Positions 9,887 to 32,631 of a stretch of 40,633 nucleotides of DNA are shown piece after piece. The stretch is from NCBI GenBank assembly GCA_002269645.1, contig NIVC01004609.1:1-40633 (forward strand). The letters are read 5' to 3'. The translations under genes were made by a program, and so were the position numbers. The notes beneath the pieces are model-generated. The model worked only from the letters and a program-made list of their open reading frames with translations. It searched no databases and was not told the DNA's origin. Position 1 is the stretch's first letter. The number at the start of each line of letters is the position of its first letter. This stretch comes from Macrostomum lignano (taxonomy: Eukaryota).

Positions 9887-10791
9887 TCCGAATAGGAGAA
9901 TTAATTCAAGCTCAAAATCAACTTGAGAATAAACTCATGGCAGCCAGGCTAGCTGTCTTCACTGTCCTTTAAATTTGCCATAAACGATTAATTATCTCTA
10001 CAACCCTTTCATTTAGAGAGCAACTAAATTTGCCATAGACGATTGATTATCTCTACAACCCTTTCAAAGCGCATTCCGGCAACAATCGCATTTCATACTC
10101 AGCATCCGCACTATGTCTGGGCCATAGACAAGGGAAGTCAAAAGGGTACAATAATGACATGTACCTAGCAATTGCGTAAGCTGAAGCCGCGGCTACAATC
10201 TACGCGGCTTCAGCTTACGCAATTGCTGCCGAAAAAAATCGGTATATATCGTTACATTGTCTGCCTCCAAAACCATAGACACAATCGACCATTGTCTGCC
10301 TCCAAAACTATGGACAATCTACAAACCATACCGTTTATGCATATGCTGTATAAATTATTATATATATTAATAAATTATCCGTGATTATTGGAGGCCAGGA
10401 AAAAAGCAAAATGACACATTTATTCATGAATTGATTAACTGCCCTTAATATAGGGAACCATTGATATTTTACGCGAGATGTGCATTTAAAAATGTAGCAA
10501 TCTCAGCGATAAGTGATTGTTTTTCTTGCTCTCCGGTGTCAAAAATAATTAAACGATTTTTCTAAGTGTTAATTAGAAGATTGCATGCAGTCGCGGTGCT
10601 TATCAACGAAAGTGATCTTTTGTGCATTGCTCTTAGCTATCACTGTTAATGGATTACAGCAGCTAATAAAGAAATGTTCTGCATAGGGAGTGCCTAAGAA
10701 GTCAAACTACGGACGTTTTACTAAATTAGCTACGCAGAGCTTGCTAAAATCTGGCAGTTCAGTCGAGAGTTCAATAACCATCGATCCAATT

Positions 10792-12040
10792 CTATTGAAG
10801 CTTGGTATGAAAACACGATCTGTAACACTTTAGGATCAGTTGTTTTGTGTAGAACTCTCGCTGGTTGAGTGCAAAAATAATGCATATACAAAGCCTCTGA
10901 TGACTCGGACATCCTGCTCCAGCGTACCAACCAAGCGCGATCATGTTTGCAGCCGTGAGCAGGATGTAGCTGATGAAGCAGATTGCATTCTTGTGACTCG
11001 CTATAAACCTTCCAAGTCTTCTGATCGTTGAGGGCGCATCCGAGGGCGCAGATGAGGGAAGCGCTTTCAGAGCGGAAATGAAGGTGAACGCGATGAGGAT
11101 GAGCATTTGTATCATGAGGAACAGACCGACTAGCGGGATCGTGTTCATGGACTTCGGAGCCGACTGGGACGCGATCAGCACGTATAGAAGAATTATTAGT
11201 CATGGACATGATGATGGCAATGGACAGGTTCACCGGGTCGCTCTTGTCACCAGCCAGGAACATGATGCTTGCGAGCAGCGACAGCAGCTCGAACGGGACA
11301 ATCACCAGCACAGCGTAGTACATCCACCTGCGCTTCAGGTGGAATTGTAAATCCACCATATAAAAGTTGAAGTCAAGTGACTTTTCTTTGGACTGTTCAC
11401 CAGTCACTTTCTCCAGATCCCACTCGCCGACCCGGGAAAGTTCCAGCCCATCGTACGTGGAGCTGTTGTAGTAAACAGACACCGATAGGTTAAAATGCGT
11501 GACGTCGGACGTTCCTGTGCTGACTTGAATAGCGCACAGCTGACTGTCGAAGGGGAAGTATCTCCCATCGATGGCGCATGCGAACTGCACCACTGCGAAT
11601 GTGTAAATGCTAGCTTCTCCGGTTGGAAACAATAGAGCATCGGCGAACATTTCGCCCTTGGAGTTGAGGAACTCGACGTCCGGTAGCCAGAGGCTGTTTC
11701 TGTGGAGACGCAGCTGGTGCGGGCTGCCCGGCGATGACGAGTTCCAGGCGAGTCGAGGGTCAGTCCAGGAAATCCAAATCCAGCCAGAGAACTCCAGCAG
11801 CTCCTTTTCGTCCAGGCCGTAGATGGTGTTCAGATAAATCAACACCCTGACGTCTGTTTGGTAGCCGAAGTAGCTCGGAGACAGCAAGACGTGGCACTGC
11901 GGCAGCGCGTGCGGTCTGATGGACTCCGCCAGTGCGCGGCACGCAGGCACGTCAGCGTTTGTTGCCGGGTCGATGGCGCTTGAGCGCATGATACTGTGAA
12001 CTAGTAGAAGCAGAGGCAGAATACATTTACAGGTTCGCAT
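10792..12040 (-). pseudogene. Cys-loop LGIC-like paralog A; 10-nt insertion in M2 (11189-11198) causes a frameshift
   Basis: Signal peptide, WTDPRLAW, WLPD, C-x13-C loop (CAIDGRYFPFDSQLC), GEW and M1 are present. AGAATTATTA is inserted relative to the other five copies. M3/M4 continue in ORF 10792-11181. There is also an in-frame 7-aa deletion (DLRNTKF) versus B. Confidence 0.85.
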
Positions 12041-12339
12041 CTTGCTGGCGCTCGTCTCGCAGTATGCAATAAAAATTTAGAAATTTGAGGCCTTCAGCCG
12101 CCAACAGAGTTCGACTAGCGTTTTTTACACTTACTCAGATTAATAATAATATTGCTTGGTACAATTGCAGTTTATTTCATAGTTACTACTCATAGTAAGC
12201 CTAAAGACAACATCCATACAACATTAAAATAAATGACACTTTCCTGTCATTAAGCAATGTAATTGACAGCTTCTTATTATCTGAACACTCGGATAGCAAA
12301 TGCAGAGTTTTCTGGTCCCGAATATTGAGGACGTTCTAC

Positions 12340-12760
12340 ATCTCTACCGATAGAAGAGTTCGAACCATGAACTGGGTTGCGACACAATGAGGACTGCGAG
12401 ACCAAAGATCCCTTAGGAGAACAGCTGACCTGCTCAAAGTGCCATGTGGGGAGTAGAAAGTGAAGTTCAGTTACTTTTTAAGTGCAGTTGGAACTTTTAC
12501 TGTATCGTGCTTCTCCGTGATAAACTTGAACAGGAAATCCCAGATAAAGTTCCGAATTAAAAAAACCTTACTGCAGAAGATTAAATATTTTACCTAATGA
12601 CTCAAGAAGACATGATGGAAATGCTACCTAGAAAACTGCATCAAAGACATGACACAAGCTAGAAAGCAACTTCATGAGGCTTCAGATTGTTACAGAAGAA
12701 AACAAGCATGAATAACACGAGATTTCACTCCCGTTAGGTCGAAAAGTATTTTTATTCACT
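12340..12760 (+). mobile_element. Non-LTR retrotransposon (LINE) 3' remnant
   Basis: Clearly homologous to 24115-24490 (e.g. ACAATGAGGA.TGCGAGACCAAAGATCCCTTA; CCGTGATAAACTTGAACAG), which encodes a LINE C-terminal Cys/His motif. Confidence 0.6.
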
Positions 12761-13369
12761 AGCTTTTTGAATTTTTGCCTCGAGTAATATCATTAAATAC
12801 CAGTACCCTCAGCGTGTTTTCAATAATAATCGTAGAAATAGTAATAATATTAGTATATTTAGATTTTGACTTAGCTGCAGGGCTGTCCCGGAGGGGACAC
12901 AGCGGGAAGGCGCGGGCGCCCATTCCGCTAAGTATATTTAGATTAATAATAAGAATGTTAATGATGATGCTATTGTTACGTAAACTGCGCCCAACCTAGG
13001 ATGGTGCATGCTTAAATACAAATTACCTCAAAAACTAGAGGTTCTAGTTGATGGAATTTTCCAGAACGGCATCTGTGACACCCAGTTAAGCAAAAAACGA
13101 TGAGGCTGCGAATGAAGGGCAATTTCTAGCTATGGTTAGCCTTAAAATAGGCAGTTTGCTCTCCTGGCTACTATTTCTGTGTTTTTTGAAGGCTATTAGG
13201 CACGGGTCTATGAGAGTTTCCTGCAGGAAGTTTTTCCGCGGAGGTTTTCCCGCAGGGTTTTTCCAATTGGATTTGAAATCTAGTCTTAGGCTAGTTCTAA
13301 TCTAGTCCAGCATTGTCTATAGACTGGATTTGACTTGAGATTCCGACAGGAAAAACCATGCGGGGAAAT

Positions 13370-13620
13370 CTCGGCGGGGAAACCTCCAGCGGGGAAACCT
13401 CCAGCGGGGAAACCTCCAGCGGGGAAACCTCCAGCGGGGAAACCTCCAGCGGGAAACCTCCAGCGCGGAAACCTCCAGCGGGGAAACCTCCAGCGGGAAA
13501 CCTTCAGCGCGGAAACCTCCAGCGGGGAAACCTCCAGCGGGGAAACCTCCAGCGGGGAAACCTCCAGCGGGGAAACCTCCAGCGGGAAAACCTCCAGCGG
13601 GGAAACCTCCAGCGGGGAAA
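13370..13620. repeat. 14-15-bp tandem repeat (GCGGGGAAACCTCCA)n
   Basis: About 17 directly visible units. Confidence 0.95.
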
Positions 13621-14069
13621 TATCGGCGGGCAAGCCTCGGCGGGAAAACTTCCGGCGGGAAATTCTCGTGTTCCCTTAGGCACATCTTTTAGACCCAGGG
13701 TCAGTTGACTTATCTTCTCAACATACGCATTAGCGATAATAGCTGCTTTAATGAGGCTGCACTATTGCCTTGAAGCACAATCGTAGTAATGTGGAATCTC
13801 TACATAAATGTACACATGATGAATCTTTATGAAAATAAAAAAAATTAATTATATCACGTTCTACGAAATAAATGAGGAAGCATTGAGGAAAATAGCGTTG
13901 TGAAAAGAACCCATGGCATAGTAATCCAGCGCATAGTGAATCTTGGCTGAAGGGATGAGATGTTTTTCTCTTAATTTCAAAGTCAAGAGATGTTGCAGCG
14001 TCTGATTCACAGCCAAACCATAGAACAATAAAACCAGTTGGTTCTTGCGCGCAAAGAAATGAATTGAAG

Positions 14070-15224
14070 TCAGATGTATACAAACACAATAATATTAATG
14101 ATAGTAAGGCTGATGTAGCTTATAAAGCAGACAACATTTTTGTGCTTTGACAGAAACAAAATCAGTTTCTTCAGTTTAGATGGCGCCTCCGAGGTCGCAG
14201 ACGAATAAGTGACTTTTAGAGCAGCGATGAAGGTGAACGCGATGAGGATGAGCATCTGAGCCATGAGGAACAGGCCGACTAGCGGGATCGTGTTCATGGA
14301 CTTCGGAGCCGACTGGGACGCGATCAGCACGTACAGAGTCATGGACATGATGATGGCGATGGACAGGTTCACCGGGTCGCTCTTGTCACCAGCCAGGAAC
14401 ATGATGCTTGCGAGCAGCGACAGCAGCTCGAACGGGACAATCACCAGCACAGCGTAGTACATCCACTTGCGCTTCAGGTGGAACTTGATGTTGGCGACAT
14501 AAAGGCTGTCACCAGCGGCCACATATCGGGAAAGCTCATGAGTAACGCTTATCAGCTCCCACTCGCCGACCTGGTACAAATCCAGGCCCAGGTTCTCTGA
14601 TTTGTTGTAGCTGATAGACACCGACAATTTGAACCCGGAAGTGTCTGACGATATGGTGCCGAGTTGGGTGGCGCACAGCTGAGTGTCGAATGGGAAGTAT
14701 CTCACATCGATGGCGCAGGCAAACTGAACAACTGCGAATGTGTAAATGCCGACTTCCCCAGTAGGAAAAATTACTGCGTCAGTGAACTTGGTGTTTCGGA
14801 GGTCAAACATCTCGCCCTTCGAATTAAGGAAGCCAACGTCTGGTAGCCACACGCTGCCCCGGTCGACTCGCAAGTACTGTGGGCTGCCTGGTGCTGAAGA
14901 ATTCCAGGCCAGCCGAGGGTCAGTCCATGAAATCTGGAACCAAGCGGAGAACTCCAGCAGCTCCTTCTCGTCCAGGCCGTAGATAGTTTTCAGCAAGATG
15001 TGCACGCTGACGTTCGTTTGGTAGCCGAACTGGCTGGGGTACATCAACGTGTGGCACTGCGCCAGCGACTGCGGACCGATGGACTCCGACAGCGCTTGAC
15101 ACGCAGCAGTGGCCGCATCAGTGCTGGCTGCTGAGTTTGACTCTGAAACAGTCGCAAGCAAGAGCAGCACAGGCAGCAGTAATGTTGCTGTTGAAGACAT
15201 TTTGTTGCCACCGGGATGGTTCAT
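14070..15224 (-). CDS. Cys-loop ligand-gated ion channel-like subunit, paralog B (intact, intronless, non-alpha nAChR-like, minimal M3-M4 loop)
   Basis: 384-aa ORF with signal peptide, WTDPRLAW, WLPDV, Cys loop CAIDVRYFPFDTQLC (C-x13-C), VGEW, LKRK pre-M1 and four hydrophobic helices. The P..MNTIPLVG M2-M3 linker is nAChR-like. Confidence 0.93.
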   Translation of the reverse strand: MNHPGGNKMSSTATLLLPVLLLLATVSESNSAASTDAATAACQALSESIGPQSLAQCHTLMYPSQFGYQTNVSVHILLKTIYGLDEKELLEFSAWFQISWTDPRLAWNSSAPGSPQYLRVDRGSVWLPDVGFLNSKGEMFDLRNTKFTDAVIFPTGEVGIYTFAVVQFACAIDVRYFPFDTQLCATQLGTISSDTSGFKLSVSISYNKSENLGLDLYQVGEWELISVTHELSRYVAAGDSLYVANIKFHLKRKWMYYAVLVIVPFELLSLLASIMFLAGDKSDPVNLSIAIIMSMTLYVLIASQSAPKSMNTIPLVGLFLMAQMLILIAFTFIAALKVTYSSATSEAPSKLKKLILFLSKHKNVVCFISYISLTIINIIVFVYI

Positions 15225-15782
15225 ATGCTTATTAACGGTAGATAAGTATTGAACTCAAATATTTGCGTTTGTCGAGCTTTTATCTTGCGTCTTGTGAGAG
15301 TTTTTTGCTTTCCCGAGTTAATTCATGCTAAACTGCTCTGCTCTCAGTGCTATATATGGATAGAGATGAGGGATTAACGCGTTGGTTCTAAACTTTTATT
15401 TGCTGCATTTTCATCTCCACAAGCTTCCTCGAGAGGTTTGGCTTGGTAAAACATTTCCGCATTTCCATTTCAGAGCTGCAGATCTCGCTCTCGTTGTCAA
15501 GGTAAATAATTAACTGCATGCTGGTTGTTCTAGACTAGGGGGGGGGGCACTCAGCTCGTCACGGCTTGTTTCACCCATCAATTAATGACATTTCTATTGG
15601 CAAATAATGAGTCCTTAGTTTTCGCAGTATTTTTTAGTCTGCTGAGTACATCTATCTCCATGAACATTAAAGGACGATTCTCTATGGAATAGCCTTTTTT
15701 TCGCAGTTGCAAACCAGTTTTGCCCAATTGTCCAAATATATGGAGAATATGATTACATTGGATCAAATTCTGTTAATTCCCG

Positions 15783-16126
15783 ATAGTCAGTGGGCCGTAG
15801 CCTGGCCCGTGTCAGCGGTCCAGGTTCGATTCCAAGTGCAGTCACATTAATTTGGGGCTAAATTGGAATCGCGGCTTGGCTCTGCTCGTGCAATTAACGG
15901 CCTTGAGGGCCGACCCCAAGGCACAGTGAAGTGTACATGCCTAACGATAAATAAAGTTAGGGCCGCTGTACACTCCTGTGTGAGTGTGTGCCTGCGCGTA
16001 TGACTGTGTACGTATCCGCGCTTGTGTGCCTGCTCAGGGGAGTCGGCGGAATGGGCAGCAATGCCTCTCGCCGGTTGTGTGACAATGTCACTTAGGTGCA
16101 CACAGCGCCTGCCTCTAATAAAAATG
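15783..16126 (+). mobile_element. tRNA-derived SINE copy with a different head/middle but the same 3' body
   Basis: TAGTCAGTGG A-box-like element, GGTTCGATTCC B-box (15823-15833), and a shared body at 15970-16126 ending CCTGCCTCTAATAAAAA. Confidence 0.7.
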
Positions 16127-16449
16127 TTCCCAATAGTGGATAGTGGATTGAACTGAGTCTTCCCTTTGGGGACAGGCGGGGCTGGTGTATGTTCATGTTA
16201 TGTTAGTATAAATGACACGAGATATGAATTATGAACGGCGACAGAAAAGAGTTCCGGGCTTAACGATGAAGATCTGCTCAGGATGGCGCAGAGCTCATTC
16301 TCTCGTCATATATGATCCCAGTGTCTTAGCAATATTTGCACTGGCATCGGGTTCTGCTCTCAAGACACTAAATGCTACTGTCACAGTGTTCTTAGGACGA
16401 GTCTATTTGCCAAGTTTGGTTATGTCCAAATAACAGCTGTGTTGCGGCA

Positions 16450-17690
16450 GCCATCCGATCAAAAGAAATGCTCCGTTTGAATGGAGATGTCTTGTCAGGT
16501 CTGGTTAAAGTTCTTCAAGCAAAGACTATTGACAACTATAAAGAATTACTTGTTGAAAGGAGTACTTTTCTGTTCACTCACTGAACTCAATGCATACTTA
16601 TCTTCTACGCAATTTCCACTAGCTTTTACGGGATCACCTGCATTACAACTCATCATCTACTTTCCTACTTTTGCCGATATAAACTTAAAAGTATCAACTG
16701 AAAAGACGTGTTCCCAAGCCAAAACGTGTACACTCAAAGTGGCCGATTTTTTAAAGCTTTCTACTCATTTGGTGAGTAGTATGGATTTAAAATTCAGAGC
16801 AAGTGCCGCTCATATGAACCCAGTCATCATGCAGTGCGTCTTCGCTTTTCTATAGCTTTTTTCAAACCTGATTAATTATTTACGTCGCCCGAATAGGTAA
16901 AATATAAAGATTGCTATACACTGTAATTGATCGTATTACTCATTAAAGGTATTGCTCTATTGCCCACAGTGCCACCTGTTGAAGGTACCGACAGCGTCGG
17001 GGTGATGACGGAATTCTGGAGAGACTAGCTGAGGATGTCCAGCAGTTGAGGCTTGCCTACTGCCGAGGCTTGATCAGCGAACTCAGAGAAACTTGCACAG
17101 GGTGTCCATAGTCACCGGGTGCCACCCTGGAAGGATCCGCCTGAGTAAAGACCAGTGACCAAAGAAGTCAGAGCTGATGCAGAGATGTGCTGGTGAAATT
17201 TGGAGGCTTGGCAAGGCTGCGCTGAGGCGCAGCGCTGGTTGGCGCACAGGGCTGTATTGAATGCACTGGCGCTTATGAATATCTCGATGGTCCGGAGGGT
17301 TGGTGACTTGATTATCGTTTGCGAAGGTGCGCAAGAAAAAGTTAGCCGATGGTCTTGACTTTTGACGCAGCAAAAACTCTTACGGCTCTTACGGCTTGTA
17401 CATCTATTTCCACTGGATTCTGTTGCTAAGGTCCAAGCATAGCGCTCGTAATTTTTAATCCATTTACCATATGCCAATTATTCAATGTGCTGGTCAACAG
17501 TCAGCCTCATCCATAGCAGACTGCGCCAAAGCAAACCTACTGGTCAAACATGCAGCAGTTTTCAAACACACGCCCACAGACTACAGGGCCAGATCACATG
17601 TTACAAACATCAGAGCCACCAAGCTGAACAAGTGGGCAGAAGCTGAACTACTGTTAGATGATTTTCTACGGCAAACTTAATGAATAATGT
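16450..17690 (+). mobile_element. Possible highly degenerate LINE RT/C-terminal remnant
   Basis: Fragmentary motifs only: NLKVSTEKT (RT-like), VTGCHPG, and CAGQQSASSIADC (C-terminal Cys-motif-like), with many stops. Confidence 0.25.
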
Positions 17691-17744
17691 GACAAATAGG
17701 AAATTTAAATATTTGACCAGCGAGCACTGTGAATATAATTATAG

Positions 17745-18538
17745 CAGGGGTTGGCAAACCTTTTAACGTCAAGGGCCAGATAGAGAACCCAGAGACTGAC
17801 TGTGGGCCCGGAGGAGGGGAGAGAGGAGAGGAAATAAAGAAGAGAGAAGGGAGGTAAGAGAAAGGAGAGGTGAGATAATAAAGGAGAAGAGAGGAGTGGA
17901 GAAGGAGGAGAGAGAAAAGAGAGGAGAGGAGGAGAGAAAATGAGTGAGAAGAGAGGAGAGAGAGGAGAGAGAAGAGAGGAGAGAGAAGAGAGGAGAGAGA
18001 AGAGGAGAGGAGGAGAGGAGATGAGGAAGGGAGGAGAGGAGATGAGGAGAGGAGGAGAGGAGATGAGAAGAGAGGAGAAGAGAGAAGATGAGAGGAGAGA
18101 GGAGAGGGAAGACGAGACGAGAGGAGAGGAGAGAGGAGAGAAGATATGATAGAGAAGAGAAGAGAGGTGGGGAGAGATGAGAGGAGAGAGAAGAGAACAT
18201 AGGAGAGAGGAAGAGAGTAGAGAGGAGATTAGAGAGAAGAGTGCTGAGAAGCGATATAAACATTGGGTGGGCCGGATTGCTTGTGGGCCGGATTGCTTGT
18301 GACGGATTTCTTGATTGCTTGTGGGCCGGATTGCTTGTGACGGATTTCTTGATTGCTTGTGGGCCGGATTGCTTGTGACGGATTTCTTGATTGCTTGTGA
18401 GCCGGATTGCTTGTGACGGATTGCTTGATTGCTTGTGGGCCGGATGCAGCACATTGTAAAGTTTCAAAGGACCCGAGGGTCGGATAGAGAGGCTCTGCGG
18501 GCCGCATGTTGCCCGACATGCAGAGTTTGCCGACCCTG
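17745..18538. mobile_element. hAT/Charlie-type non-autonomous DNA transposon (MITE) with internal GA microsatellite and 38-bp tandem repeats
   Basis: Left end CAGGGGTTGGCAAAC (17745) and right end GTTTGCCGACCCTG (18525-18538) form imperfect TIRs. Subterminal GGGCCG(G/C)A motifs are present. No intact 8-bp TSD is visible. Confidence 0.7.
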
Positions 18539-18636
18539 CATGAATTAGAGACTGGGAGAGTAATGGCTGGCGTACGTGCTTGTCATCAAGCAGAAAACCA
18601 GAATGAAAGTCTTCAGCTTCATTTAGCTTCAGCTTC

Positions 18637-19781
18637 ATGTCTTCACTGGCGCAACTCCGGATTCTTCTGAGCCACGCAGTCTTGCTGGTATCAGCCAGCA
18701 CTGAATGGGCTGCCGACGCTGAAGTGGCCGCCTGTCGCGCTCTGTCGGAGTCCATCGGTGCGCAGTCGCGTCAAGCTGTCACCGAAGCACTGTGGCTACG
18801 ATACAAATATTGAGTTGTTGTCTTGATGCTCCATGTGAAGACTATATATACATGTACGGCCAGGACGAGAAGGAGCTGGAGGAGTTCACCGGCTGGATTC
18901 AGATGACCTGGACTGACCCCCCGGCTAGCCTGGAGCTCAACGGAAAGTCCACTGAAGCAGCTACGGGTGGAGAGGAACAGCTTGTGGTTGCCGGATGCTG
19001 GATTCTGGAATACGCGGGAAAGCTGAGAGCTTTATGACGCACGAAATGCAAAGTTCCAGGACGCCACAATGTTCCCCACTGGTAAGGGTAAGATCTATAT
19101 CTTCTTTGTAGTCCGATTTGCCTGCATCATACAAGTCGCCAAGTTTCCATTCGACGCGCAAGTCTGCTCAAGTTTCCAAGTCTGCTCCATTCAAATCGGC
19201 ACGATATCTTCGGACTTGACGGTGTTCAATATTACAGTGCAAAATATATTTAAAGAGAATATTGATTCGGTACAGTCTTCGTCAACTGTCAGTGAATGGG
19301 ACTTGAAAAATATTTCTCAAACGGACATGATCGACTCTATTGGTGGGCAGCAATTCAAAAGTGTGAGGCTTCTCCTTCAACTGGAGCGAAGGTTCATGTA
19401 TTATTGGTGATTGTCTCGTTCCAGCTGCTGTCGCTGCTCGCAAGCATCATGTTCCTGGCTGGTGACAAGAGCGACTCGGTGAACCTGTCCATCGCCATCA
19501 TCATGTCCATGACTCTGTACGTGCTGATCGCGTCCCAGTCGGCTCCGAAGTCCATCCTCATCGCGTTCACCTTCATCGCAGCCGCTCAGAACAAAACAGA
19601 TAGATCAGCTGCTCACAAACCGGAGGCTGAGCATAGAAAGCGAGGCTGGAAGACAGTTCTATTGCAACACAGAAACGTGGCTGCTACATTGCAGCAAGTG
19701 TCTGCAATGCATGCGCATTTTTGTTTATATCACCAAGTAGCTATTAAGGACAATTTTAACTCCAAAACTTTCTGCAATTAG
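18637..19781 (+). pseudogene. Cys-loop LGIC-like paralog C, degraded pseudogene
   Basis: ATG 18637 MSSLAQLRILLSHAVLLV...AACRALSESIG; then YGQDEKELEEFTGWIQMTWTDP, FACIIQVAKFPFDAQVC, SEWDL and the pore cassette lie in several frames, with multiple frameshifts and stops. A 48-nt deletion removes MNTIPLVGLFLMAQML. Confidence 0.88.
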
Positions 19782-20602
19782 TGGTGAATGTTTCAATGAG
19801 AAATCATGGTGACAGAATTTTGCAAAACAAATGCTTCAACTCAGTCAACTCAATCTTTGAAGTTTGGAAATAATTTTTCGAATGCACGACTCCAATGGCT
19901 TATTTATACTTTAGCTAATATGCTCGTAGTTAGCGCGCATCTCATTTGTACTGTTTCTTAACTTAGTACAAAGTCGAATAAAGCATTAACTAACTAATAT
20001 TGCAATAATACACGTTTTACTGATACGACCCCCATTAGTAAAATAACTAATTCATGCAAGGACCCGTCAGAACCTGCTGCATGTTTTCTTATGTAACAGA
20101 TAAAGTTTATTTGTTCACGTAAAATGGTAAAGAGCTGCTTGTTAATTTGCAGCAGTTTTTTAGATCAAAATAGATCAAGATCAAAATACTATACTGTAAT
20201 TGCAAACTTTGATTGGTTGATCGGACACGTGGGCCATATTGGAACAATTGAAACAATATAACATGCAAAGAACCAGCTATTACAGCACAGCGATGACAAT
20301 CAACGTAGGTAGGATTTACTGCACGCGGTGCATACTCTCGTAGTGTTGTATTTTTGGGTAAATGAACGAACCGAGAATTCAATTGTCGGTGCAATCAAGC
20401 TTAAATTGTAGTGGTATAGTAGTACTCGTAGTAGTTGACGGCACAGTAGCAAATACTTGCTAAATGGCTGAGAGTTCCTCAATAGTACTATTTCAAGTCA
20501 AACAGTTCCTAAAAAAGTGAATATCGATATCCGATCTCACTTTTGTCAGAAATTGACAAACTTTTTGCTCTATTTAAGAAAAAATCGTGGCTAAGAGTGC
20601 AG

Positions 20603-21752
20603 CTACTTATCGGCGCTCAGGTGGGCGGGCCAGACATAGATGAAAACGAGCGCGTTCACCCCGCTGAGCAGCAGGTAGGCGCAGCTGCACACAACAGCCC
20701 GGTGGCGAAACAAGAAGGTCCAGCAGCTTTTCGTCACCTTTGCACTTTCACGACTCGCAACCTGCTGTCTGCCAGGGAAAGCAGCGATGAAGGTGAACGC
20801 GATGAGGATGAGCATCTGAGCCATGAGGAACAGACCGACTAGCGGGATCGTGTTCATGGACTTCGGAGCCGACTGGGACGCGATCAGCACGTACAGAGTC
20901 ATGGACATGATGATGGCGATGGACAGGTTCACCGGGTCGCTCTTGTCACCAGCCAGGAACATGATGCTTGCGAGCAGCGACAGCAGCTCGAACGGGAAAA
21001 TCACCAGCACAGCGTAGTACATCCACCTGCGCTTCAGGTGGAACTGGATGTTGACTACCGGGTAGATAGCGCCATTTGCAGTAAGAAAGTATGAGTTATG
21101 ATCAACAGACTGCAGGATCCATTCGCCAACTTGGTACAGCTCGAGTCCACTGTCTTCCGAGTAGTTGTAGCTCACCCTTGCCGAAAAGTTGAGTGCAGCT
21201 ACGTCAGATGTAACTGTAGCCAGTTGGGTTGCGCAAACCTGGCTGTCAAACGGGAAGGATCTCACATCAAGGGCGCATGCGAATTGGACAACGCAAAATG
21301 CGTAAATAAACGCTTCTCCTGATGCACTAAGAACTACGTCAGAGAATTTCGCGTTTCTAATGTCGAACATCTCGCCCTTGGAATTCAGAAAGCCGATGTC
21401 AGGAAGCCACAGACTGTTCCTGTCGATGCGCATGTACCGTGGACTGCCTCTAGCTGATGAGTTCCAGGCCAGCCGAGGGTCGGTCCATGCCAGCTCAATC
21501 CAGGCAGAGAACTCCAGCAGCTCCTTGTCGTCCAGACCGTAGATGGTCTTCAGTAGAATTTTAACAGCGACGCTGTTTTCGTAGCCGAAATGGCTCGGCG
21601 ACAGCATGACGTGGCACTGCGGCAGCGACTGCGGTCCGATGGACTCGGCCAGTGAGCGGCACGCGGCTACGTTGACGTTCGAGGCCGGATCGATGGTGGC
21701 TCAGAAAACAGTGCAACAGAATGAATCTGGCTGGCTGAATCAGGTGCTGCAT
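20603..21752 (-). CDS. Cys-loop LGIC-like paralog D; signal peptide (ATG 21752) is out of frame with the open 366-codon main frame 21700-20603 (pseudogene or sequencing error)
   Basis: The main frame has ACRSLAESIGPQSLPQCH, WTDPRLAW, CALDVRSFPFDSQVC, GEW and M1-M4. There is an in-frame TGA at 21701-21703, and MQHLIQPARFILLHCFLS lies in the adjacent frame. Confidence 0.8.
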
Positions 21753-22328
21753 TCTACAGTAAGTATCTTCAGAACGTCTGACAATTGGATTTCTCTAAAT
21801 GGATCGAATGCAAAGCTGCTGGGAAGTGGGAAGCTTCGGTAGCTTTAAACGGTGACAAATATAGTTAAGAGTTTGCCGCCCAGCAGATTCGCACCAATCA
21901 GGAAACTTTGCCCTCCTCATCTTCTATTCAGTGCTTCGCTTTTATCAAGCGTTCTTAATATGCTACTTAACTTAAACCATAAAAGTAGCTTCATCACTCT
22001 TCACCACTTGCATTGCTACTAATAGTAGTAGAAACTATTGTTTCAAAACTGTTCTACAGCGTATTGTACAAAAAATTAAAGCCTTCCATATTGCGAAAAT
22101 CCCATTTAAAGTGAGTTATAAGCTATACAACTTGAAGATTTGAGATTGGCTCTAACCTCCTTTGCTAGATAGAAAGAAAAAGGATGCTGGATAGTTTTTG
22201 CGTCAACTGGCTTCGCAGCGAATCAGAGCTAACGAATTTATACGAATAAAAATCAGGTCTCAAGGCAAGGAAACTCCAAGGTTATAAATTTTTTTAAAGT
22301 CGTGGATATTCAGTAACAAATCGTAGCC

Positions 22329-23488
22329 ATGCTCACCTGTCTTAGGTCTGTAATCTTTCGACTGTTGCTGGTAATGGGGAGCAGCGCTTTTTTACGCTTG
22401 ATCGCCATCAGTCCAGCCTCCAACGCAGACAAGGCAGCATGCCGGGCTCTGGCGGAGTCCATCGGGCCGCAGTCGCTGCCGCAGTGCCACGTCATACTGT
22501 CTCCCAAAAACTTTGGCTACAATACGAACGTCGAGATAGTCATATCGATCAAGACCATTTACGGACTGGGAGAGAACAAGCTGCTGGAGTGGTCCGGTTG
22601 GACCTTCATCAGCTGGACTGACCCAAGACTGGCTCGGAACGTATCCGAAAGCCAATTGGATCAACTGCGAGTGGAGCGGAACAGCCTGTGGCTGCCAGAC
22701 ATTGGCTTCTGGAACAGCAAGGAGGAGAGCTTGTACGACATTCGAAATTCTGGCCTCTTGGAAGTGACGGTATTTCCCTCCGGCCTCGTGTACGCCTACG
22801 TGTACCTGGTGATTCGGTCTGCATGCGCAGTTGACATCAGACTATTTCCATTTGATCAGCAGCTTTGCACTATAGAGTTGGGAACCATCACTTCTGACTC
22901 GAGTGTCTTCAATTACACACTCTTAAGCACCTTATCGATCAACAAGATAGACGGAGTGTCCTACCAAGTTGGGGAGTGGAATTTGAACGAGCTATCGCAG
23001 CACAATCGCACTAATGTTATTAATGGTCAATCGTTTCCTTGCACCGAGATCAAGTTCCACCTGACGCGCAGGTGGATGTACTACGCTGTGCTGGTGATTG
23101 TCCCGTTCGAGCTGCTGTCGCTGCTCGCAAGCATCATGTTCCTGGCTGGTGACAAGAGCGACCCGGTGAACCTGTCCATCGCCATCATCATGTCCATGAC
23201 TCTGTACGTGCTGATCGCGTCCCAGTCGCTCCGAAGTCCATGAACACGATCCCGCTAGTCGGTCTGTTCCTCATGGCTCAGATGCTCATCCTCATCGCGT
23301 TCACCTTCCTGACCGTTGTTTCTCCAAGGCAATCAAGGCGAAGTGAACGAAGCCCTAAGATCTTTTTCGACTGCGTTGAGTTCTGTATTAAACAGAAAAA
23401 TAGTATTTGTTTTATCAGCTACCTTGTTGTCAGTGGACTTAACGCAGCAGTGTTTCTGTTTCTTCTACCATATCAAGACAGAAAATAA
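22329..23488 (+). CDS. Cys-loop LGIC-like paralog E; 1-nt deletion at ~23228 (GG to G) splits the ORF (sequencing error or recent pseudogene)
   Basis: ORF 22329-23243 has signal, ECD with CAVDIRLFPFDQQLC, M1 and M2; ORF 23240-23488 has M3 and M4. E reads CAGTCGCTCCG where the other copies read CAGTCGGCTCCG. Confidence 0.85.
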
Positions 23489-23699
23489 GATAACGAGAAT
23501 GATTAATATCAAAGATTTGGTTTGGCAACAAAATAAATTTGACCATCTTTAAATTTAAACGATAGATCTTGTGCACTTGTTAATCTAATCACGAAGAGGC
23601 CCATAGATGCCCACGTAGTTTCATAATGCTTTTAGAAGTATTAGTTGGCCTTGGAATAACTCACTCTAGTACAGTCGAAGTTGAAAGCATGTTCTTGAC

Positions 23700-24490
23700 G
23701 CCTCTGAGGCCTGGGGGCTGTTGTTTTCTAGAACCTGGGCTCGAAGTCTAATCGAGAGGATCAATTTCAGATCTTGCAAATCATTCTCCAAGGCTGACTG
23801 CAATACCCAAAATTGAATTATTCAGTACCGGGCCTCACTAGCAAATCACTCAGACTCCATCATCTCGAGACAGTGAGGTTGGCATTACAGCTAAAATGAA
23901 TACTGAAATAATGCGAAATTTTCAAAATGGACGAGTAACGAAATCAATCAGAACACACAAAGCTACTCGAAGTAGTTTTGAACTAGAATTTACGAGGCAC
24001 TGAAAGCAAAGAGTAGAGAACTCTGAAAATTTAACTCACTACTCAGCCGAAAAGCGTCCTAGAAATTTGCAATCCAGAATTGAAGCGCACCCTGTCACAG
24101 TTTAGATTAGCAAACCATAAACTGGCCTGCGAAACAATGAGGATTGCGAGACCAAAGATCCCTTACGAGAACAGGACCTGCCCAAAGTGCCATATGGGGG
24201 GTAGAATGTGAAGTTCACTTCCTGTTTAAGTGCTGTTGGAACTTTTTAGTGGCTCCCCGTGATAAACTTGAACAGTTGAAAGTCTCGGATAAAGTTTCGG
24301 ATTTTAGAAACCATACGGCAGAAGAAAAAGTATTTTACCGAATGACTCAAGTAGATAGAGGCATAATGGAAATTTTTGCAAGATTATCAAAGACAAGCTA
24401 GAATGCAACTGCCCTGAGGCTTCAGATTGCCTTGATAAGAGTACTTTGTGCACTAGACTTCACTCCCCCGTTACGTCCAGAAAAATTATT
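23700..24490 (+). mobile_element. Non-LTR retrotransposon (LINE) 3' remnant
   Basis: Translates (with shifts) EAWG...IERINFRSCK and PELKRTLSQFRLANHKLACETMR...PYENRTCPKCHM-GVECEVHFLFKC, the typical FR...H.L..E...R.C..C...E.E.HFL..C C-terminal motif of LINE ORF2. Confidence 0.7.
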
Positions 24491-25271
24491 GACTGCTTTT
24501 TGCATTCATTATTTCGTTGTATTTTGCAACTCAACGGTTTCACTACAAGTTGGACACACAAAGCAGCTCAATATTTGCCAATTGCATCCATGGATTTCTG
24601 AGAATGTTTGCTGCAGACAACGCTAGGCTAATGTTTAACAATCCACTTTCAGAATTAATCAATAAATGTATTTGTCGCTATACAGTCCAATTTATATTGT
24701 TGGCGAAGACCCCAGCTGTTCAGTGGTGAAATTCATAAAGAATTGCATCTCAAGATATTTACACTTGCACTAATCATTTGCTAGCTAAGCCGCCTTTAAT
24801 GTGTTGATTAAATTGAATTGAACTGTGTTGTCTGGCACTCTAGCAGCTTCATCAGTGAGTGCAGTTTCTATGGCGGCTGCTTAAATATTTAGTCACGCAG
24901 TTGCTAAGCCATTATTTGCTCGAGAAGCAACAAGTGTACTTCTGTTATTTGCTTTTTGTCAAGCGTTCGGTTATTACTGATAATCAAATTTAACACGAAT
25001 GCAAAATAGCTATCAGCAAGTCAAAACCCGTTGCAATAAAGAATAATTTTATTTGAGAAACTACGAAAACATGATAACTTTTCAGAGTCGCTTTACTTTG
25101 AAGGAGGGTTACCATATTGAATTCAATGTTTGTAGAACGTCAATTATATATACTCTATTCTATGCGAATAATCCCAGCACTATCAATGTGCCATCTTTCC
25201 CAAACATAAAGCCGTAAAATTATTTGTGCATCTGCTCAAGCTGAAAGGCCAAATAATTAAAAGTTAGGGGG

Positions 25272-25386
25272 TTACGTATCAGATTAAACATGCCTTTTGA
25301 GGGAGTTATTTGTATAAATCACGAGGGCCTGAGGCCCGAGGGATTTATGAAAATAACTCCCGAAAAAGGCATGTGTAATCTCGTAT
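25272..25386. repeat. Imperfect palindrome with ~40-bp arms and a GGGCC-TGA-GGCCC centre
   Basis: 25281-25320 (AGATTAAACATGCCTTTTGAGGGAGTTATTTGTATAAATC) versus the reverse complement of 25342-25381 (AGATTACACATGCCTTTTTCGGGAGTTATTTTCATAAATC). Confidence 0.9.
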
Positions 25387-25389
25387 AAA

Positions 25390-25485
25390 CCATAGACATA
25401 AAGACTTGACGGGATATTATTGAATATTACCAAATAAAATCCCGGGGAACGCAAATATTGTCACGGAAAGTCTTTATTTCTATGG
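25390..25485. mobile_element. 96-bp mini element with 16-bp TIRs CCATAGA(C/A)ATAAAGAC
   Basis: CCATAGACATAAAGAC (25390-25405) and GTCTTTATTTCTATGG (25470-25485) match at 15/16 positions in inverted orientation. Confidence 0.55.
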
Positions 25486-25625
25486 ATTATGAAAAATTTT
25501 TGTGTCGTGATGTCTGTGTTATACATCTTAAGAATCCGTCTTGCAGTGATTAAACGACTCAATGAAACTTTCTGAGATGCCAAGGCTCATGGCTACTCAT
25601 GCGAAAGTAAATAACAGCAACGCTC

Positions 25626-26807
25626 TTAAGAGTCCAAATGAGGCCATAAAACCAAAAACGCGACAGAGTTTAGTCCGCTAGTCGACAGGTACAGAAATAA
25701 GAGGACTAGGTTCCTTTTTCCGTCAAGACCCTGCCAGTATTGGCTCAAAGTTGAGCTCGTCCCCTCATTGAAATTTATCAAACGCTTTTGATCGACGGCC
25801 GCAATGAAAGTGAAAACGATGAGAATGAGCATTTGTATCATGAGGAACAGACCGACTAGCGGGATCGTATTCATGGACTTCGGAGCCGACTGGGACGCGA
25901 TCAGCACGTACAGAGTCATGGACATGATGATGGCGATGGACAGGTTCACCGGGTCGCTCTTGTCACCAGCCAGGAACATGATGCTTGCGAGCAGCGACAG
26001 CAGCTCGAACGGGACAATCACCAGCACAGCGTAGTACATCCACTTGCGCTTCAGGTGAATGTTTATTTTGTGAAAGGGAAAGCTCTCTTCAATACTGTGC
26101 AATACAGCCTGTTCTTGCTTAACTCCCTCCAGCTCCCATTCACCGACACCGAACAGTCCGATGTCATTGCTCATGAGACGGGCAGACAGCGATATGTTTA
26201 ACTCGTCCGAATATGACACAACCGTGCCGACTCCAACTGAACAGACCTGCCGGTCGAAAGGAAACTTTCGCACATTCAGGACGCATCCAAACTTTATCAC
26301 CAGGTAAATCGGAAGAACCACCGTTCCCGTGCTGTACACTGAAACCGAAATAAATTTCGAATTACGGAGATCAAACATATCGTTGTCCTTTCCATTCCAG
26401 AAACCAATGTCCGGCAGCCAGAGACTGTCTCTGTCGATAACTAGATGGTCTACGGCCTTGTCGGACGAGTTCCAGGCCAGCCGAGGGTCGGTCCACGTCA
26501 GATCAATCCATGCGGACCACTCCAACAGCTCCTTCTCGTCCAAGCCGTACACAGCCATCAATTCGATTGTAACCGAGACGCTGGTGTCGTAGCCGAAACT
26601 CTTTGGCGATAGTATCGCGTGACACTGCGGCAGCGACTGCGGCCCGATGGACTCCGCCAGTGCGCGGCACGCGGCCACGTCAGCATTGGCTGCCGAGTCG
26701 ATGGCGGCCGAGTGGGTAGCTGCGCTGGCTACCAGAAGCAGCACAGCTGACAGTGGCAACTGTCCAATGCAGCTCTGCCATGCTGCTGGAAGGGAAATTA
26801 GTAACAA
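25626..26807 (-). CDS. Cys-loop LGIC-like paralog F; open frame intact from signal peptide to M4, but no in-frame ATG before the signal peptide
   Basis: 393-codon frame (TTG start in the ORF track) with ACRALAESIGPQSLPQCH, WTDPRLAW, CVLNVRKFPFDRQVC, GEW and M1-M4. A strong 3' splice site ends at 26786/26783, and an out-of-frame ATG sits at 26781. Confidence 0.85.
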   Translation of the reverse strand: MLLISLPAAWQSCIGQLPLSAVLLLVASAATHSAAIDSAANADVAACRALAESIGPQSLPQCHAILSPKSFGYDTSVSVTIELMAVYGLDEKELLEWSAWIDLTWTDPRLAWNSSDKAVDHLVIDRDSLWLPDIGFWNGKDNDMFDLRNSKFISVSVYSTGTVVLPIYLVIKFGCVLNVRKFPFDRQVCSVGVGTVVSYSDELNISLSARLMSNDIGLFGVGEWELEGVKQEQAVLHSIEESFPFHKINIHLKRKWMYYAVLVIVPFELLSLLASIMFLAGDKSDPVNLSIAIIMSMTLYVLIASQSAPKSMNTIPLVGLFLMIQMLILIVFTFIAAVDQKRLINFNEGTSSTLSQYWQGLDGKRNLVLLFLYLSTSGLNSVAFLVLWPHLDS

Positions 26808-28177: not shown

Positions 28178-28482
28178 ATGAGCAACGTACCTGGCAATGA
28201 GGAGTCGGAGGCTGGCTCCCTGTTGCAGAGTCTCATGCTGGCCATGCGGCAGCAGCAACTCATGGAGCTGCAGGAGGCACTAGCTGAGTCGCATCGAGAC
28301 CAGCAGCCTGCACAACCGCAGCCGCAGCAGCAGCAACAGCGCGCGGCTGCTGCTGACTCGGCGTCGGAAGCTGGTGACGAAGTTTACGCAACAAAGCCGA
28401 ACTGCAAGCCTGGCGGATACGCCGAAGAAAGCTTTATTCACCTGTCCGAGGCGGACAAAGAAGAGTTTGGCTGCAGAATTTG
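28178..28482 (+). CDS. Exon 1 of a RING finger (C3HC4) + TRAF/SINA-type zinc finger E3 ligase-like gene
   Basis: ORF ending EEFGCRI-TG|GTGAGT (donor 28483, phase 2); joined to C29592 this gives TGC, the second RING cysteine. Confidence 0.8.
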
Positions 28483-32588: not shown

Positions 32589-32631
32589 CTGCAATTGGGA
32601 ATTGATGAATTTCGCCTTGCAACTGTGAGCA

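What the first reader, a model, noticed from the sequence alone, without database searches (positions are those of the whole stretch)
10792..26807. Six-member tandem array of intronless, atypical Cys-loop receptors: candidate independently evolved chemosensory (chemotactile-like) receptor family
Seen: six paralogs in 16 kb (A-, B-, C+, D-, E+, F-), each with a continuous coding region containing signal peptide, C-x13-C Cys loop and four TMs, with divergent ECDs and several broken copies. Established: canonical nAChR genes are multi-exon and conserved. Octopus chemotactile receptors are tandemly arrayed atypical nAChR-derived channels that lost ACh-binding residues and sense environmental chemicals; bivalves also have large nAChR-like expansions. 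Inference: this is a birth-and-death sensory receptor family, probably retroposed and then tandemly duplicated, in a lineage (possibly a flatworm) where I know of no described equivalent.
Basis: partly seen in the sequence, partly recalled or inferred. Interest (0 to 1): 0.92.

Follow-up and report, generated by a model that had tools for sequence, protein, structure and literature searches.

The report
Flatworm orphan Cys-loop receptor gene cluster
A 16-kb stretch of the flatworm Macrostomum lignano genome holds six single-exon copies (one intact, five damaged) of a divergent nicotinic-receptor-like ion-channel gene whose ligand-binding halves have drifted far apart while the pore-forming segment is kept nearly identical by gene conversion; this is a local variation on the receptor expansions already known in related animals, and nothing here shows a sensory role.

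Summary
Each has a continuous coding region: signal peptide, C-x13-C loop with FPFD, and four TM helices. B is intact. C is a dead pseudogene. A has a 10-nt insertion and a 21-nt deletion. D, E and F each carry a 1-nt frameshift, which could be real or an assembly error.

The window is Macrostomum lignano, since a neighbouring gene is 97-99% identical to a UniProt protein of that species.

The proteins fall in a flatworm clade together with the trematode 'AChR-related' subunit Smp_012000. They lack the loop-B Trp, two further aromatic-box Tyr and the loop-C Cys pair. They have a -1' Asp, an unusual pore (0' Pro, 9' Met) and an M3-M4 linker of only about 26 residues.

A block of about 260 nt (pre-M1 to mid-M3) is 98-100% identical at nucleotide level in B, D and E and 92-98% in A, C and F. 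Its dS is 0-0.03, against 0.8-1.9 in the ECD. This indicates TMD-limited gene conversion.

No hallmarks of retroposition were found. The chemosensory reading is untested. Intronless tandem nAChR arrays are already known in molluscs. Interest is moderate.

The parts
10792..12040 (-). Copy A: pLGIC pseudogene. ATG at 12040. A 21-nt in-frame deletion in the ECD. A 10-nt insertion (about 11189..11198) shifts the frame inside M2. The second frame runs on to a stop at 10792.
14070..15224 (-). Copy B: the only intact gene. It is a 384-aa single ORF with signal peptide, N-terminal Cys pair, ECD with Cys loop, M1-M3, an M3-M4 linker of about 26 residues, and M4.
18637..19781 (+). Copy C: heavily degraded pseudogene. 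At least 3 in-frame stops, several frameshifts, an 18-nt duplication after the Cys loop, and 46-nt and 7-nt deletions.
20603..21752 (-). Copy D: the ORF is intact from the mature N-terminus to the stop. The signal-peptide ATG (21750..21752) is out of frame, with a 1-nt shift near a T4 run at about 21700.
22329..23488 (+). Copy E: ATG at 22329. A 1-nt deletion at about 23228 (GG to G), inside the homogenised block, shifts the frame. The rest of M3-M4 reads on in the next frame to a stop at 23486..23488.
25626..26781 (-). Copy F: the ORF is otherwise intact (signal-like h-region through M4) but has no in-frame ATG. The nearest ATG (26779..26781) is out of frame. It is preceded by a branch-point/polypyrimidine/AG acceptor-like motif.
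11069..11344 (-). Homogenised block in A (end of beta10 / pre-M1 through M1, M2, the M2-M3 loop and half of M3). 92% identical to B; the comparison includes the 10-nt insertion.
14217..14486 (-). Homogenised block in B, used as the reference copy. GC3 is 0.88, against 0.69 in the ECD.
19405..19582 (+). Homogenised block in pseudogene C. 97-98% identical to B apart from a 46-nt deletion.
20780..21045 (-). Homogenised block in D. 98.9% identical to B.
23052..23308 (+). Homogenised block in E. 98.5% identical to B, with a 1-nt deletion.
25798..26057 (-). Homogenised block in F. 95.4% identical to B; the differences cluster at the M3 end.

Best explanation
This is a lineage-specific cluster of six single-exon paralogs in Macrostomum lignano: one intact gene, one dead pseudogene and four copies with one or two lesions. 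They encode divergent nicotinic-receptor-like pentameric ligand-gated channel subunits of a flatworm clade whose parasite representatives include the 'AChR-related' subunit Smp_012000.

Shown:
- The duplicates are old. ECD dS is 0.8-1.9 and no flank homology remains.
- The ECD evolved under purifying selection (dN/dS 0.2-0.46), except loop C, which is hypervariable.
- A segment of about 260 nt encoding pre-M1, M1, M2, the M2-M3 loop and half of M3 has been kept nearly identical (98-100% in B, D and E; 92-98% in A, C and F, counting their indels) by gene conversion.

Inferred:
- The subunits form homo- or heteropentameric cation channels. They have a -1' Asp ring and no PAR anion motif.
- The M3-M4 linker is reduced to about 26 residues.
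- Gating is by something other than ACh bound in the canonical way, because the loop-B Trp, the loop-A Tyr, the first loop-C Tyr and the vicinal Cys pair are all replaced.
- The paralogs therefore supply different ligand-binding domains on one shared pore and gating module.

The physiological role (sensory, modulatory or accessory) is not established.
For: Species: a neighbouring gene is 97-99% identical to an M. lignano UniProt protein.

Family and fold:
- Pfam PF02931 at E = 3e-32.
- phmmer against PDB finds alpha7, alpha3 and beta4 at E about 1e-33.
- The AlphaFold2 model (pLDDT 80) has four TM helices, and Foldseek finds nAChR chains at TM about 0.7.

Clade:
- The exhaustive HMMER search puts M. 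lignano A0A1I8I4U5 first (47% identity), followed by orphan Logan ORFs and trematode or monogenean 'nAChR subunit' proteins.
- The NJ tree gives 100% bootstrap for this clade, apart from classical nAChRs.
- The M2-M3 motif (A/T)P(K/R)S(M/V) occurs only in this clade among the 231 proteins in hand.
- The Smp_012000 Cys loop is identical to that of the trematode hits.

Binding site and pore: read from the alignment to human alpha7.

Gene conversion:
- Mean pairwise identity jumps from 0.38 to 0.99 and falls back over sharp borders.
- Block dS is 0-0.03 against 0.8-1.9 in the ECD.
- Pseudogene C also carries the block.
- GC3 is 0.81-0.88 in the block against 0.63-0.69 in the ECD, as GC-biased conversion would give.
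- As a control, a nematode tandem pLGIC array conserves the M2 protein sequence but differs at many synonymous sites, with nucleotide identity 0.79-0.89.
Against: - Five of the six copies carry disabling lesions, so the cluster may be largely or wholly decaying.
- None of the six products is in the 15-billion-protein collection, and there is no transcript evidence.
- The shared pore has a 0' Pro and a 9' Met where relatives have Arg and Leu. A defective module could have been spread by conversion.
- Loss of principal-face residues is also what ordinary non-alpha subunits show.
- dS in the ECD is saturated, so the omega values are rough.
- The tree is neighbour-joining on 336 columns, and the shared block inflates the monophyly of the window copies.
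- The 1-nt frameshifts cannot be told apart from assembly errors without reads.
Confidence: 0.6

Rival explanations
1. Chemosensory receptor family, analogous to cephalopod chemotactile receptors. The variable ECDs would detect environmental or prey-derived chemicals in peripheral sensory cells, with the shared pore transducing the signal.
For: - The genes are clustered, lineage-specific paralogs, and canonical ACh-binding residues are lost.
- Loop C, the lid of the orthosteric site, is only 16% identical between paralogs, with omega about 0.95, while the rest of the ECD is constrained.
- Cephalopod CRs likewise diverged from nAChRs, sit in tandem clusters and show selection in the binding pocket.
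Against: - There are no expression, localisation or ligand data of any kind.
- Only one copy is intact.
- Omega near 1 in loop C fits relaxed constraint as well as diversifying selection.
- The parasite orthologs are single conserved genes that retain the loop-B Trp, which suggests an ancestral neurotransmitter-type role.
Confidence: 0.15
2. Ordinary non-alpha (structural or complementary) subunits. They would co-assemble with alpha-type M. lignano nAChR subunits in cholinergic receptors and contribute only the complementary face.
For: - The loop-D Trp (alpha7 W55 equivalent) of the complementary face is conserved in all copies, while principal-face residues are lost. This is the pattern of beta, gamma and delta subunits.
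- The best word-index hits are vertebrate gamma, delta, epsilon and beta subunits.
- A -1' acidic residue is present, as in cationic nAChRs.
Against: - The family is phylogenetically remote from classical subunits.
- The M3-M4 linker of about 26 residues lacks the usual MX/MA region found in heteromeric nAChR subunits.
- The pore has atypical 0' Pro and 9' Met, which would make an asymmetric pore when combined with classical subunits.
- Six fast-diverging copies are not expected for a structural partner.
Confidence: 0.2
3. Non-functional relic. The whole cluster would be a decaying set of unexpressed pseudogenes, with B merely the last copy not yet hit. The identity of the block would reflect neutral (GC-biased) conversion without selection.
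For: - Five of the six copies have frameshifts, stops or no start codon.
- No product is found in protein collections.
- The dead copy C still carries the block, so conversion acts without regard to function.
- The unusual 0' Pro and 9' Met could be a degenerate state.
Against: - ECD dN/dS of 0.2-0.46 over a long divergence (dS above 0.8) shows selection for most of the family's history.
- B keeps a 384-aa ORF with every structural hallmark.
- D, E and F each have a single 1-nt lesion, two of them at short homopolymers, which are compatible with assembly error.
Confidence: 0.2
4. The near-identity of the TM block is due only to strong purifying selection on the pore, or to an assembly collapse, and not to gene conversion.
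For: TM1-TM3 is the most conserved part of all pLGICs. Short-read polishing of repeated sequence can homogenise copies artificially.
Against: - Synonymous divergence in the block is 0-0.03, against 0.8-1.9 next door.
- The borders are sharp.
- The nematode control shows that protein-level constraint on M2 leaves many synonymous differences.
- The M. lignano paralog A0A1I8I4U5 has a different M1 sequence, so the protein tolerates change.
- Copy-specific indels and substitutions within the block (A, C, E, F) argue against a simple collapse.
Confidence: 0.07

Closest known systems
Flatworm 'AChR-related' subunit clade: Schistosoma mansoni Smp_012000, Fasciola hepatica THD26242.1, and orthologs in Clonorchis, Opisthorchis, Paragonimus, Dicrocoelium and Cichlidogyrus
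   Same: - Groups with the window copies at 100% NJ bootstrap.
- Shares the M2-M3 motif AP(K/R)SM, a 'VPF' M1 and a -1' Asp.
- Has no vicinal Cys in loop C.
- Functionally uncharacterised.
   Different: - The parasite genes appear in the search as one or two divergent members per species and are conserved.
- They have introns.
- They keep the loop-B Trp, a 0' Arg and a 9' Leu.
- Their intracellular loops run to roughly 180 to more than 450 residues.
- The M. lignano copies are clustered, intronless and short-looped, have lost the Trp, and share a converted pore block.
Intronless, tandemly arrayed nAChR expansions of molluscs (Jiao et al. 2019, PMC6896357)
   Same: A lophotrochozoan lineage-specific expansion with intronless genes in tandem arrays. 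Many members have low or no expression or are pseudogene-like, and sequence diversity is high.
   Different: - It is a different clade. The molluscan alpha10-like sequences fall with the classical nAChRs in the tree.
- That study sampled no flatworm.
- It inferred retroposition, whereas no retroposition hallmark is detectable here.
- It reported neither an ICD reduction nor TMD-limited gene conversion.
Cephalopod chemotactile receptors (CRs; van Giesen 2020, Allard 2023, Kang 2023, as reviewed in PMC11526382)
   Same: - nAChR-derived.
- No canonical ACh binding.
- Clustered paralogs.
- A variable binding pocket.
- Expected to be cation channels.
   Different: - CRs are shown to be expressed in sucker sensory cells and to be gated by poorly soluble hydrophobic ligands. 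Nothing comparable is known here.
- The origin is independent, since the nearest relatives here are flatworm genes. No CR sequence was placed in the tree.
Alpo4, the orphan nAChR-like receptor of Alvinella pompejana (PMC10338036)
   Same: An orphan lophotrochozoan nAChR-like subunit without the loop-C Cys pair. No agonist was found despite screening.
   Different: Alpo4 keeps the aromatic cage (F103, W159, Y199, Y205, W65) and has an ICD of about 100 residues (308-412). The M. lignano proteins lack three cage residues and have a linker of about 26 residues.

Membership tests
Cys-loop / pentameric ligand-gated ion channel superfamily | Extracellular ligand-binding domain (PF02931) | tested here: met
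   E = 3.4e-32 (B), 5.3e-29 (F), 5.1e-28 (D)
Cys-loop / pentameric ligand-gated ion channel superfamily | C-x13-C Cys loop with the F/YPxD motif | tested here: met
   All six copies, for example CAIDVRYFPFDTQLC in B
Cys-loop / pentameric ligand-gated ion channel superfamily | Four transmembrane helices and an overall fold matching solved pLGICs | tested here: met
   AlphaFold2 helices at 254-277, 284-305, 315-335 and 362-383. Foldseek top hits are alpha7 and muscle nAChR, TM about 0.7, E about 1e-24. PF02932 is only weak, at 21-25 bits against a cut-off of 28.
Cys-loop / pentameric ligand-gated ion channel superfamily | Pentameric assembly forming a gated pore | not testable with these tools
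   Needs expression and biochemistry
ACh-gated nicotinic receptor, agonist-binding (alpha-type) subunit | Vicinal Cys-Cys at the tip of loop C | tested here: not met
   Aligned to Ala-Gly in B and absent in all copies
ACh-gated nicotinic receptor, agonist-binding (alpha-type) subunit | Aromatic box (alpha7 Y93, W149, Y188, Y195 and W55) | tested here: not met
   Y93 becomes L (W in E and F). W149 becomes I, V or G. Y188 becomes V. Only the equivalents of Y195 and W55 are kept in B..
ACh-gated nicotinic receptor, agonist-binding (alpha-type) subunit | Cation-selectivity signature before M2 (-1' acidic, no PAR) | tested here: met
   The sequence is 'KSDP': -1' Asp and no Pro-Ala-Arg. The interpretation of Asp follows PMC9874803.
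ACh-gated nicotinic receptor, agonist-binding (alpha-type) subunit | Activation by acetylcholine | not testable with these tools
   Needs electrophysiology
Flatworm Smp_012000-like 'AChR-related' clade | Phylogenetic grouping with the trematode or monogenean members | tested here: met
   NJ tree, 100% bootstrap from 200 replicates on 336 columns. They are also top hits of the exhaustive HMMER search.
Flatworm Smp_012000-like 'AChR-related' clade | M2-M3 loop motif (A/T)P(K/R)S(M/V) | tested here: met
   SAPKSM in the window copies. The motif occurs only in clade members among the 231 proteins in hand.
Flatworm Smp_012000-like 'AChR-related' clade | 1:1 orthology, long intracellular loop, and retained loop-B Trp | tested here: not met
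   The M. lignano copies are a local expansion, have a linker of about 26 residues, and carry I, V or G at the Trp position. They are co-orthologs, not orthologs.
Cephalopod chemotactile receptors | Membership of the cephalopod CR clade | not tested
   No CR sequence was available to place in the tree. The nearest relatives found are flatworm genes, so membership is unlikely by inference.
Cephalopod chemotactile receptors | Expression in peripheral sensory cells and activation by environmental (hydrophobic) ligands | not testable with these tools
   The defining properties are taken from PMC11526382 and the 2025 bioRxiv preprint. There are no such data for M. lignano.
Cephalopod chemotactile receptors | Diversifying selection in the orthosteric pocket | tested here: inconclusive
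   Loop C has omega about 0.95 and 16% identity, while the other loops have omega 0.06-0.26. dS is saturated and only five sequences were compared.
Retroposed, tandemly duplicated nAChR arrays (mollusc type) | Intronless coding region within a tandem cluster | tested here: met
   The intron at 'PLLG|I' present in the Fasciola and Mesorhabditis relatives is absent here.
Retroposed, tandemly duplicated nAChR arrays (mollusc type) | Residual retroposition hallmarks (poly(A) tract, flanking direct repeats) | tested here: not met
   There is no A-run of 8 or more within 450 nt 3' of any copy, and homology between copies ends at the CDS. Flanking direct repeats were not specifically searched for. 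The age of the copies (dS above 0.8) could have erased such marks, so retroposition is neither shown nor excluded.

The most novel reading that the evidence does not exclude
The cluster could be part of a 'variable ligand-binding domain on a constant pore' receptor system. In this reading gene conversion is not incidental. It would be maintained because all paralogs must share one pore and gating module, for example to co-assemble freely. The ECDs, especially loop C, would diversify to recognise many non-cholinergic ligands. That would make it an independently evolved ionotropic chemoreceptor family in a free-living flatworm, built on a metazoan Cys-loop scaffold that almost lacks an ICD.
Probability: 0.15. 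Interest if true: 0.75.

Novelty: new variant of a known kind. Interest (0 to 1): 0.45.

Why it matters
Lineage-specific expansions of orphan nAChR-like channels are common in lophotrochozoans, but their function is known only for cephalopod chemotactile receptors.

This locus is a compact and tractable example in a flatworm where RNAi, transgenesis and in situ methods are available (this is my own knowledge of the M. lignano model). It combines three features:
- a metazoan Cys-loop subunit with an almost absent intracellular domain;
- loss of the canonical agonist cage;
- a sharp mosaic of concerted evolution (pore) and divergent evolution (ECD) within one gene.

The mosaic gives a natural experiment on which parts of a pLGIC must stay compatible between co-expressed paralogs.

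The family's parasite co-orthologs (the Smp_012000 group) are uncharacterised members of the ligand-gated channel families that have been proposed as anthelmintic targets. De-orphanising the intact copy B could therefore inform on them.

If the copies turn out to be unexpressed relics, the locus is only a textbook case of birth-and-death evolution with gene conversion.

Tried and rejected
- **Word-indexed protein searches.** These returned only hits at 17-31% identity, mostly vertebrate nAChRs with some invertebrate ones, and missed the real relatives. The exhaustive HMMER search was needed.
- **Exact look-ups of the window proteins and of P0070.** Nothing was found, so no genomic context for other M. 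lignano paralogs could be obtained and genome-wide paralog counting was not possible.
- **Alpo4 as a short-ICD relative.** Rejected, because its ICD is about 100 residues.
- **Retroposition hallmarks.** None were found.
- **Transposon involvement.** Pfam scans of the intergenic ORFs found no TE domains.
- **RNA genes.** Rfam and tRNA scans of the window were empty.
- **Supplementary FASTA of the schistosome LGIC paper.** It is not held. The link to Smp_012000 therefore rests on the identical Cys-loop string in another paper and on the GDR motif.
- **Nematode tandem array (Mesorhabditis) as a second case of TMD-limited conversion.** Rejected, because its synonymous sites differ. It serves as a control instead.
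- **Taxa of the Logan contigs that carry the closest non-Macrostomum short-loop relatives (ERR14224704, DRR639838).** These could not be determined.

Full report
**1. What is in the sequence**

There are no other copies in the window.

B (14070..15224, minus strand) is a continuous 384-aa ORF. Pfam finds the neurotransmitter-gated channel ligand-binding domain at E = 3e-32 and a weak, sub-threshold match to the transmembrane-region model. All copies carry a C-x13-C Cys loop with FPFD.

B aligns collinearly with human alpha7 from beta1 to M3 at E about 1e-33. An AlphaFold2 model (pLDDT 80, pTM 0.71) shows the beta-sandwich ECD and helices M1 (254-277), M2 (284-305), M3 (315-335) and M4 (362-383). 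Only about 26 residues lie between M3 and M4. Foldseek returns alpha7, alpha3beta4 and muscle nAChR chains with TM about 0.7.

Coding regions are uninterrupted in every copy.

**2. State of the copies**

- B is intact.
- C is dead: at least three in-frame stops, several frameshifts, and 46-nt and 7-nt deletions.
- A has a 21-nt in-frame deletion in the ECD and a 10-nt insertion in M2.
- E has a 1-nt deletion (GG to G) at about 23228.
- D reads through from the mature N-terminus to the stop, but its signal-peptide ATG (21750..21752) is one base out of frame, with the shift near a T4 run.
- F has a good signal-like h-region but no in-frame ATG. The nearest ATG (26779..26781) is out of frame.

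The three single-base lesions could be recent pseudogenisation or consensus errors in a long-read assembly. I cannot tell which without reads.

**3. Organism**

A two-exon Sel1/COA7-like gene at 34067..35690 (minus strand) is 97-99% identical to a UniProt protein of Macrostomum lignano. The window is also very rich in minisatellites.

**4.

In a nucleotide alignment of the six copies, mean pairwise identity is 0.35-0.75 through most of the ECD. It jumps to 0.93-1.00 (all six copies; 0.97-1.00 without C) over alignment columns 821 to 1030 and falls back to 0.33-0.5 in the C-terminal part.

The block covers the end of beta10, M1, M2, the M2-M3 loop and half of M3. Its window coordinates are 11069..11344, 14217..14486, 19405..19582, 20780..21045, 23052..23308 and 25798..26057.

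Nei-Gojobori estimates give dS of 0.8-1.9 (saturating) and dN/dS of 0.2-0.46 in the ECD. In the part of the block shared by all five alignable copies, dS is 0-0.03.

Four points show that selection on the protein alone cannot explain this:
- Synonymous sites are identical.
- The dead copy C carries the block.
- Another M. lignano paralog has a different M1 sequence.
- A tandem pLGIC array in the nematode Mesorhabditis keeps the M2 peptide almost invariant yet differs at a third to a half of the codons for identical residues.

GC3 is 0.81-0.88 in the block against 0.63-0.69 in the ECD, as expected from GC-biased conversion.

Copy-specific indels and substitutions inside the block argue against a simple assembly collapse, although confirmation from reads is still needed. 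The best reading is recurrent gene conversion confined to the segment that remained similar enough to recombine. Orientation is mixed, so the conversion acts between both direct and inverted copies.

**5. Relatives**

The word-indexed searches found only hits at 17-31% identity, mostly vertebrate nAChRs with some invertebrate ones.

The exhaustive profile search found, in order:
- Three truncated M. lignano models (A0A1I8I4U5 and two near-identical entries), about 47% identical to the window copies.
- Unnamed single-ORF genes on short genomic Logan contigs.
- A set of trematode and monogenean proteins annotated as putative nAChR subunits, from Fasciola, Heterobilharzia, Dicrocoelium, Clonorchis, Opisthorchis, Paragonimus, Schistosoma spp. 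and Cichlidogyrus.

The Cys-loop string of Smp_012000 printed in a review, CPLDVSFFPFDYQTC, is identical to that of the schistosomatid hits. The pre-M2 'GDR' reported for that gene also matches. The parasite clade is therefore the 'AChR-related' Smp_012000 group, which to my knowledge is uncharacterised.

A neighbour-joining tree (336 columns, 200 bootstraps) puts the window copies with the other M. lignano paralog at 100%. That group joins the Logan and trematode sequences at 100%, apart from classical nAChR subunits, with 5-HT3 as outgroup. The M2-M3 motif (A/T)P(K/R)S(M/V) occurs only in this clade among the 231 proteins collected.

The family is thus a local expansion that is co-orthologous to a conserved flatworm subunit. 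It is neither a 1:1 ortholog of a classical subunit nor a family without relatives.

**6. Predicted properties**

Against alpha7:
- Loop A Y93 is Leu (Trp in E and F).
- The cation-pi Trp of loop B is Ile, Val or Gly.
- Loop C Y188 is Val.
- The Cys-Cys pair is Ala-Gly.
- The Y195 equivalent (in B) and the complementary-face Trp of loop D (in all copies) are kept.

The trematode orthologs keep the loop-B Trp, so its loss is specific to the free-living branch.

Loop C is the least conserved part (16% identity, omega about 0.95). Loops A, D and F and the Cys loop have omega of 0.06-0.26; no ratio could be computed for loops B and E because their dS is saturated.

The pore encoded by the shared block reads -1' Asp, 0' Pro, 2' Asn, 6' Ala, 9' Met, 13' Leu, 16' Leu, 20' Gln. 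There is no PAR anion motif. An acidic -1' residue points to cation selectivity (interpretation as in PMC9874803). The 0' Pro and 9' Met are unusual, since relatives have Arg and Leu.

A conserved extra Cys pair (C42/C57 in B) lies in the N-terminal helix region and is absent from the trematode proteins.

The M3-M4 linker of about 26 residues contrasts with about 100 residues in Alpo4. The trematode orthologs have roughly 180 to more than 450 residues there.

**7. Origin of the intronless state**

The Fasciola ortholog has introns before the WxDxxLxW motif and at 'PLLG|IFLL'. The second position is shared with the nematode array. The M. lignano copies lack both.

None of the copies has a poly(A) remnant or an A-run in its 3' flank. 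Homology between copies ends at the CDS. No transposon domain is present nearby.

Retroposition followed by duplication is possible, but nothing here shows it. With dS above 0.8 such marks would be erased anyway. Mixed orientation also shows that the duplications were not simple head-to-tail events.

**8. Comparison with what is known**

Intronless, tandemly arrayed and partly unexpressed nAChR expansions are described in molluscs and annelids and are attributed to retroposition plus tandem duplication. That study sampled no flatworm (PMC6896357).

M. lignano LGICs have been listed: 48 rows in S1 Table, 15 of them GABA or GluCl type, which by subtraction leaves 33 nAChR-like genes. No comment was made on this family.

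Cephalopod chemotactile receptors are nAChR-derived, clustered, gated by poorly soluble ligands and expressed in suckers. The M. lignano genes share the genomic and binding-site analogies, but none of the functional evidence exists for them.

I found no paper that describes gene conversion limited to the TMD of a pLGIC array. That search was limited.

**9. Verdict**

The locus is a real, moderately unusual example of a known phenomenon: lineage-specific expansion of orphan nAChR-like channels. Three features are noteworthy: a near-absent intracellular domain, a degraded agonist cage with a hypervariable loop C, and a converted common pore module.

The chemosensory interpretation is one of several open possibilities, and I put it at about 15%. 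I score interest at 0.45.

Noticed in passing
window 403..1987; 5859..6572; 32626..33324; 35752..39209: There are very long arrays of 16-nt and 28-nt minisatellites, the largest being 216 copies of AAATGGCAGGTTGGTG over 3.4 kb. They produce many spurious overlapping ORFs. Tandem repeats appear to fill roughly a quarter of the window (a rough reading of the table, not computed).
   Followed up: partly
window 34067..35690 (-): A two-exon Sel1/COA7-like gene, 97-99% identical to an M. lignano UniProt protein. Its intron (about 34460..35258) is filled with a 27-nt and 62-nt minisatellite. This gene identified the species.
   Followed up: yes
window 2001..3068 (-): A GC-rich (58%) single ORF of 355 aa with a C2 domain (PF00168, E = 3e-9). 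It seems to be a complete intronless gene next to a 1.6-kb satellite.
   Followed up: partly
window 28178..30772 (+): Gln-rich ORFs (102 aa and 342 aa) with no Pfam match. There is a 160-nt tandem duplication at 30451..30757. The N-terminal Cys/His-rich stretch (CRCPGEY...CNWRGCLSDLDGHKH) looks zinc-finger-like but was not verified.
   Followed up: partly
window 12363..12689 and 24113..24429: This is the only non-coding similarity inside the cluster (78% over 337 nt). It is probably a dispersed repeat rather than a shared promoter. Short palindromes lie at 10167..10227, 25281..25381 and 27385..27417.
   Followed up: no
P0070 / P0220 / P0221 (M. lignano UniProt A0A1I8I4U5, HUS3, HYE3): All three models of the nearest M. 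lignano paralog stop at the same residue inside M1 (...YYAVLILLPFEM). This is the point where the homogenised block lies in the window copies. It suggests assembly or gene-model breaks at a repeated TM segment in that subfamily too.
   Followed up: no
L004 (Mesorhabditis spiculigera CATQJA010002634.1, 340212..354893): A nematode tandem array of at least six short-linker pLGIC genes that have been fused into one gene model. M2 is almost invariant at the protein level but divergent at synonymous sites. It shares the 'PLLG|' intron position with the Fasciola gene.
   Followed up: partly
L001 (Logan ERR14224704) and L002 (Logan DRR639838): These are single-ORF members of the same clade (387 aa and 398 aa) with short linkers and Phe at the loop-B Trp position. 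The contigs are genomic, since they end in microsatellites. The organisms are unknown, so the family extends beyond M. lignano in intronless form.
   Followed up: partly
window 26782..26807 (-), upstream of copy F: The sequence TTGTTACTAATTTCCCTTCCAG lies immediately 5' of F's out-of-frame ATG. It resembles a branch point plus polypyrimidine tract plus AG acceptor, which could mark a 5' intron or a spliced-leader acceptor.
   Followed up: no
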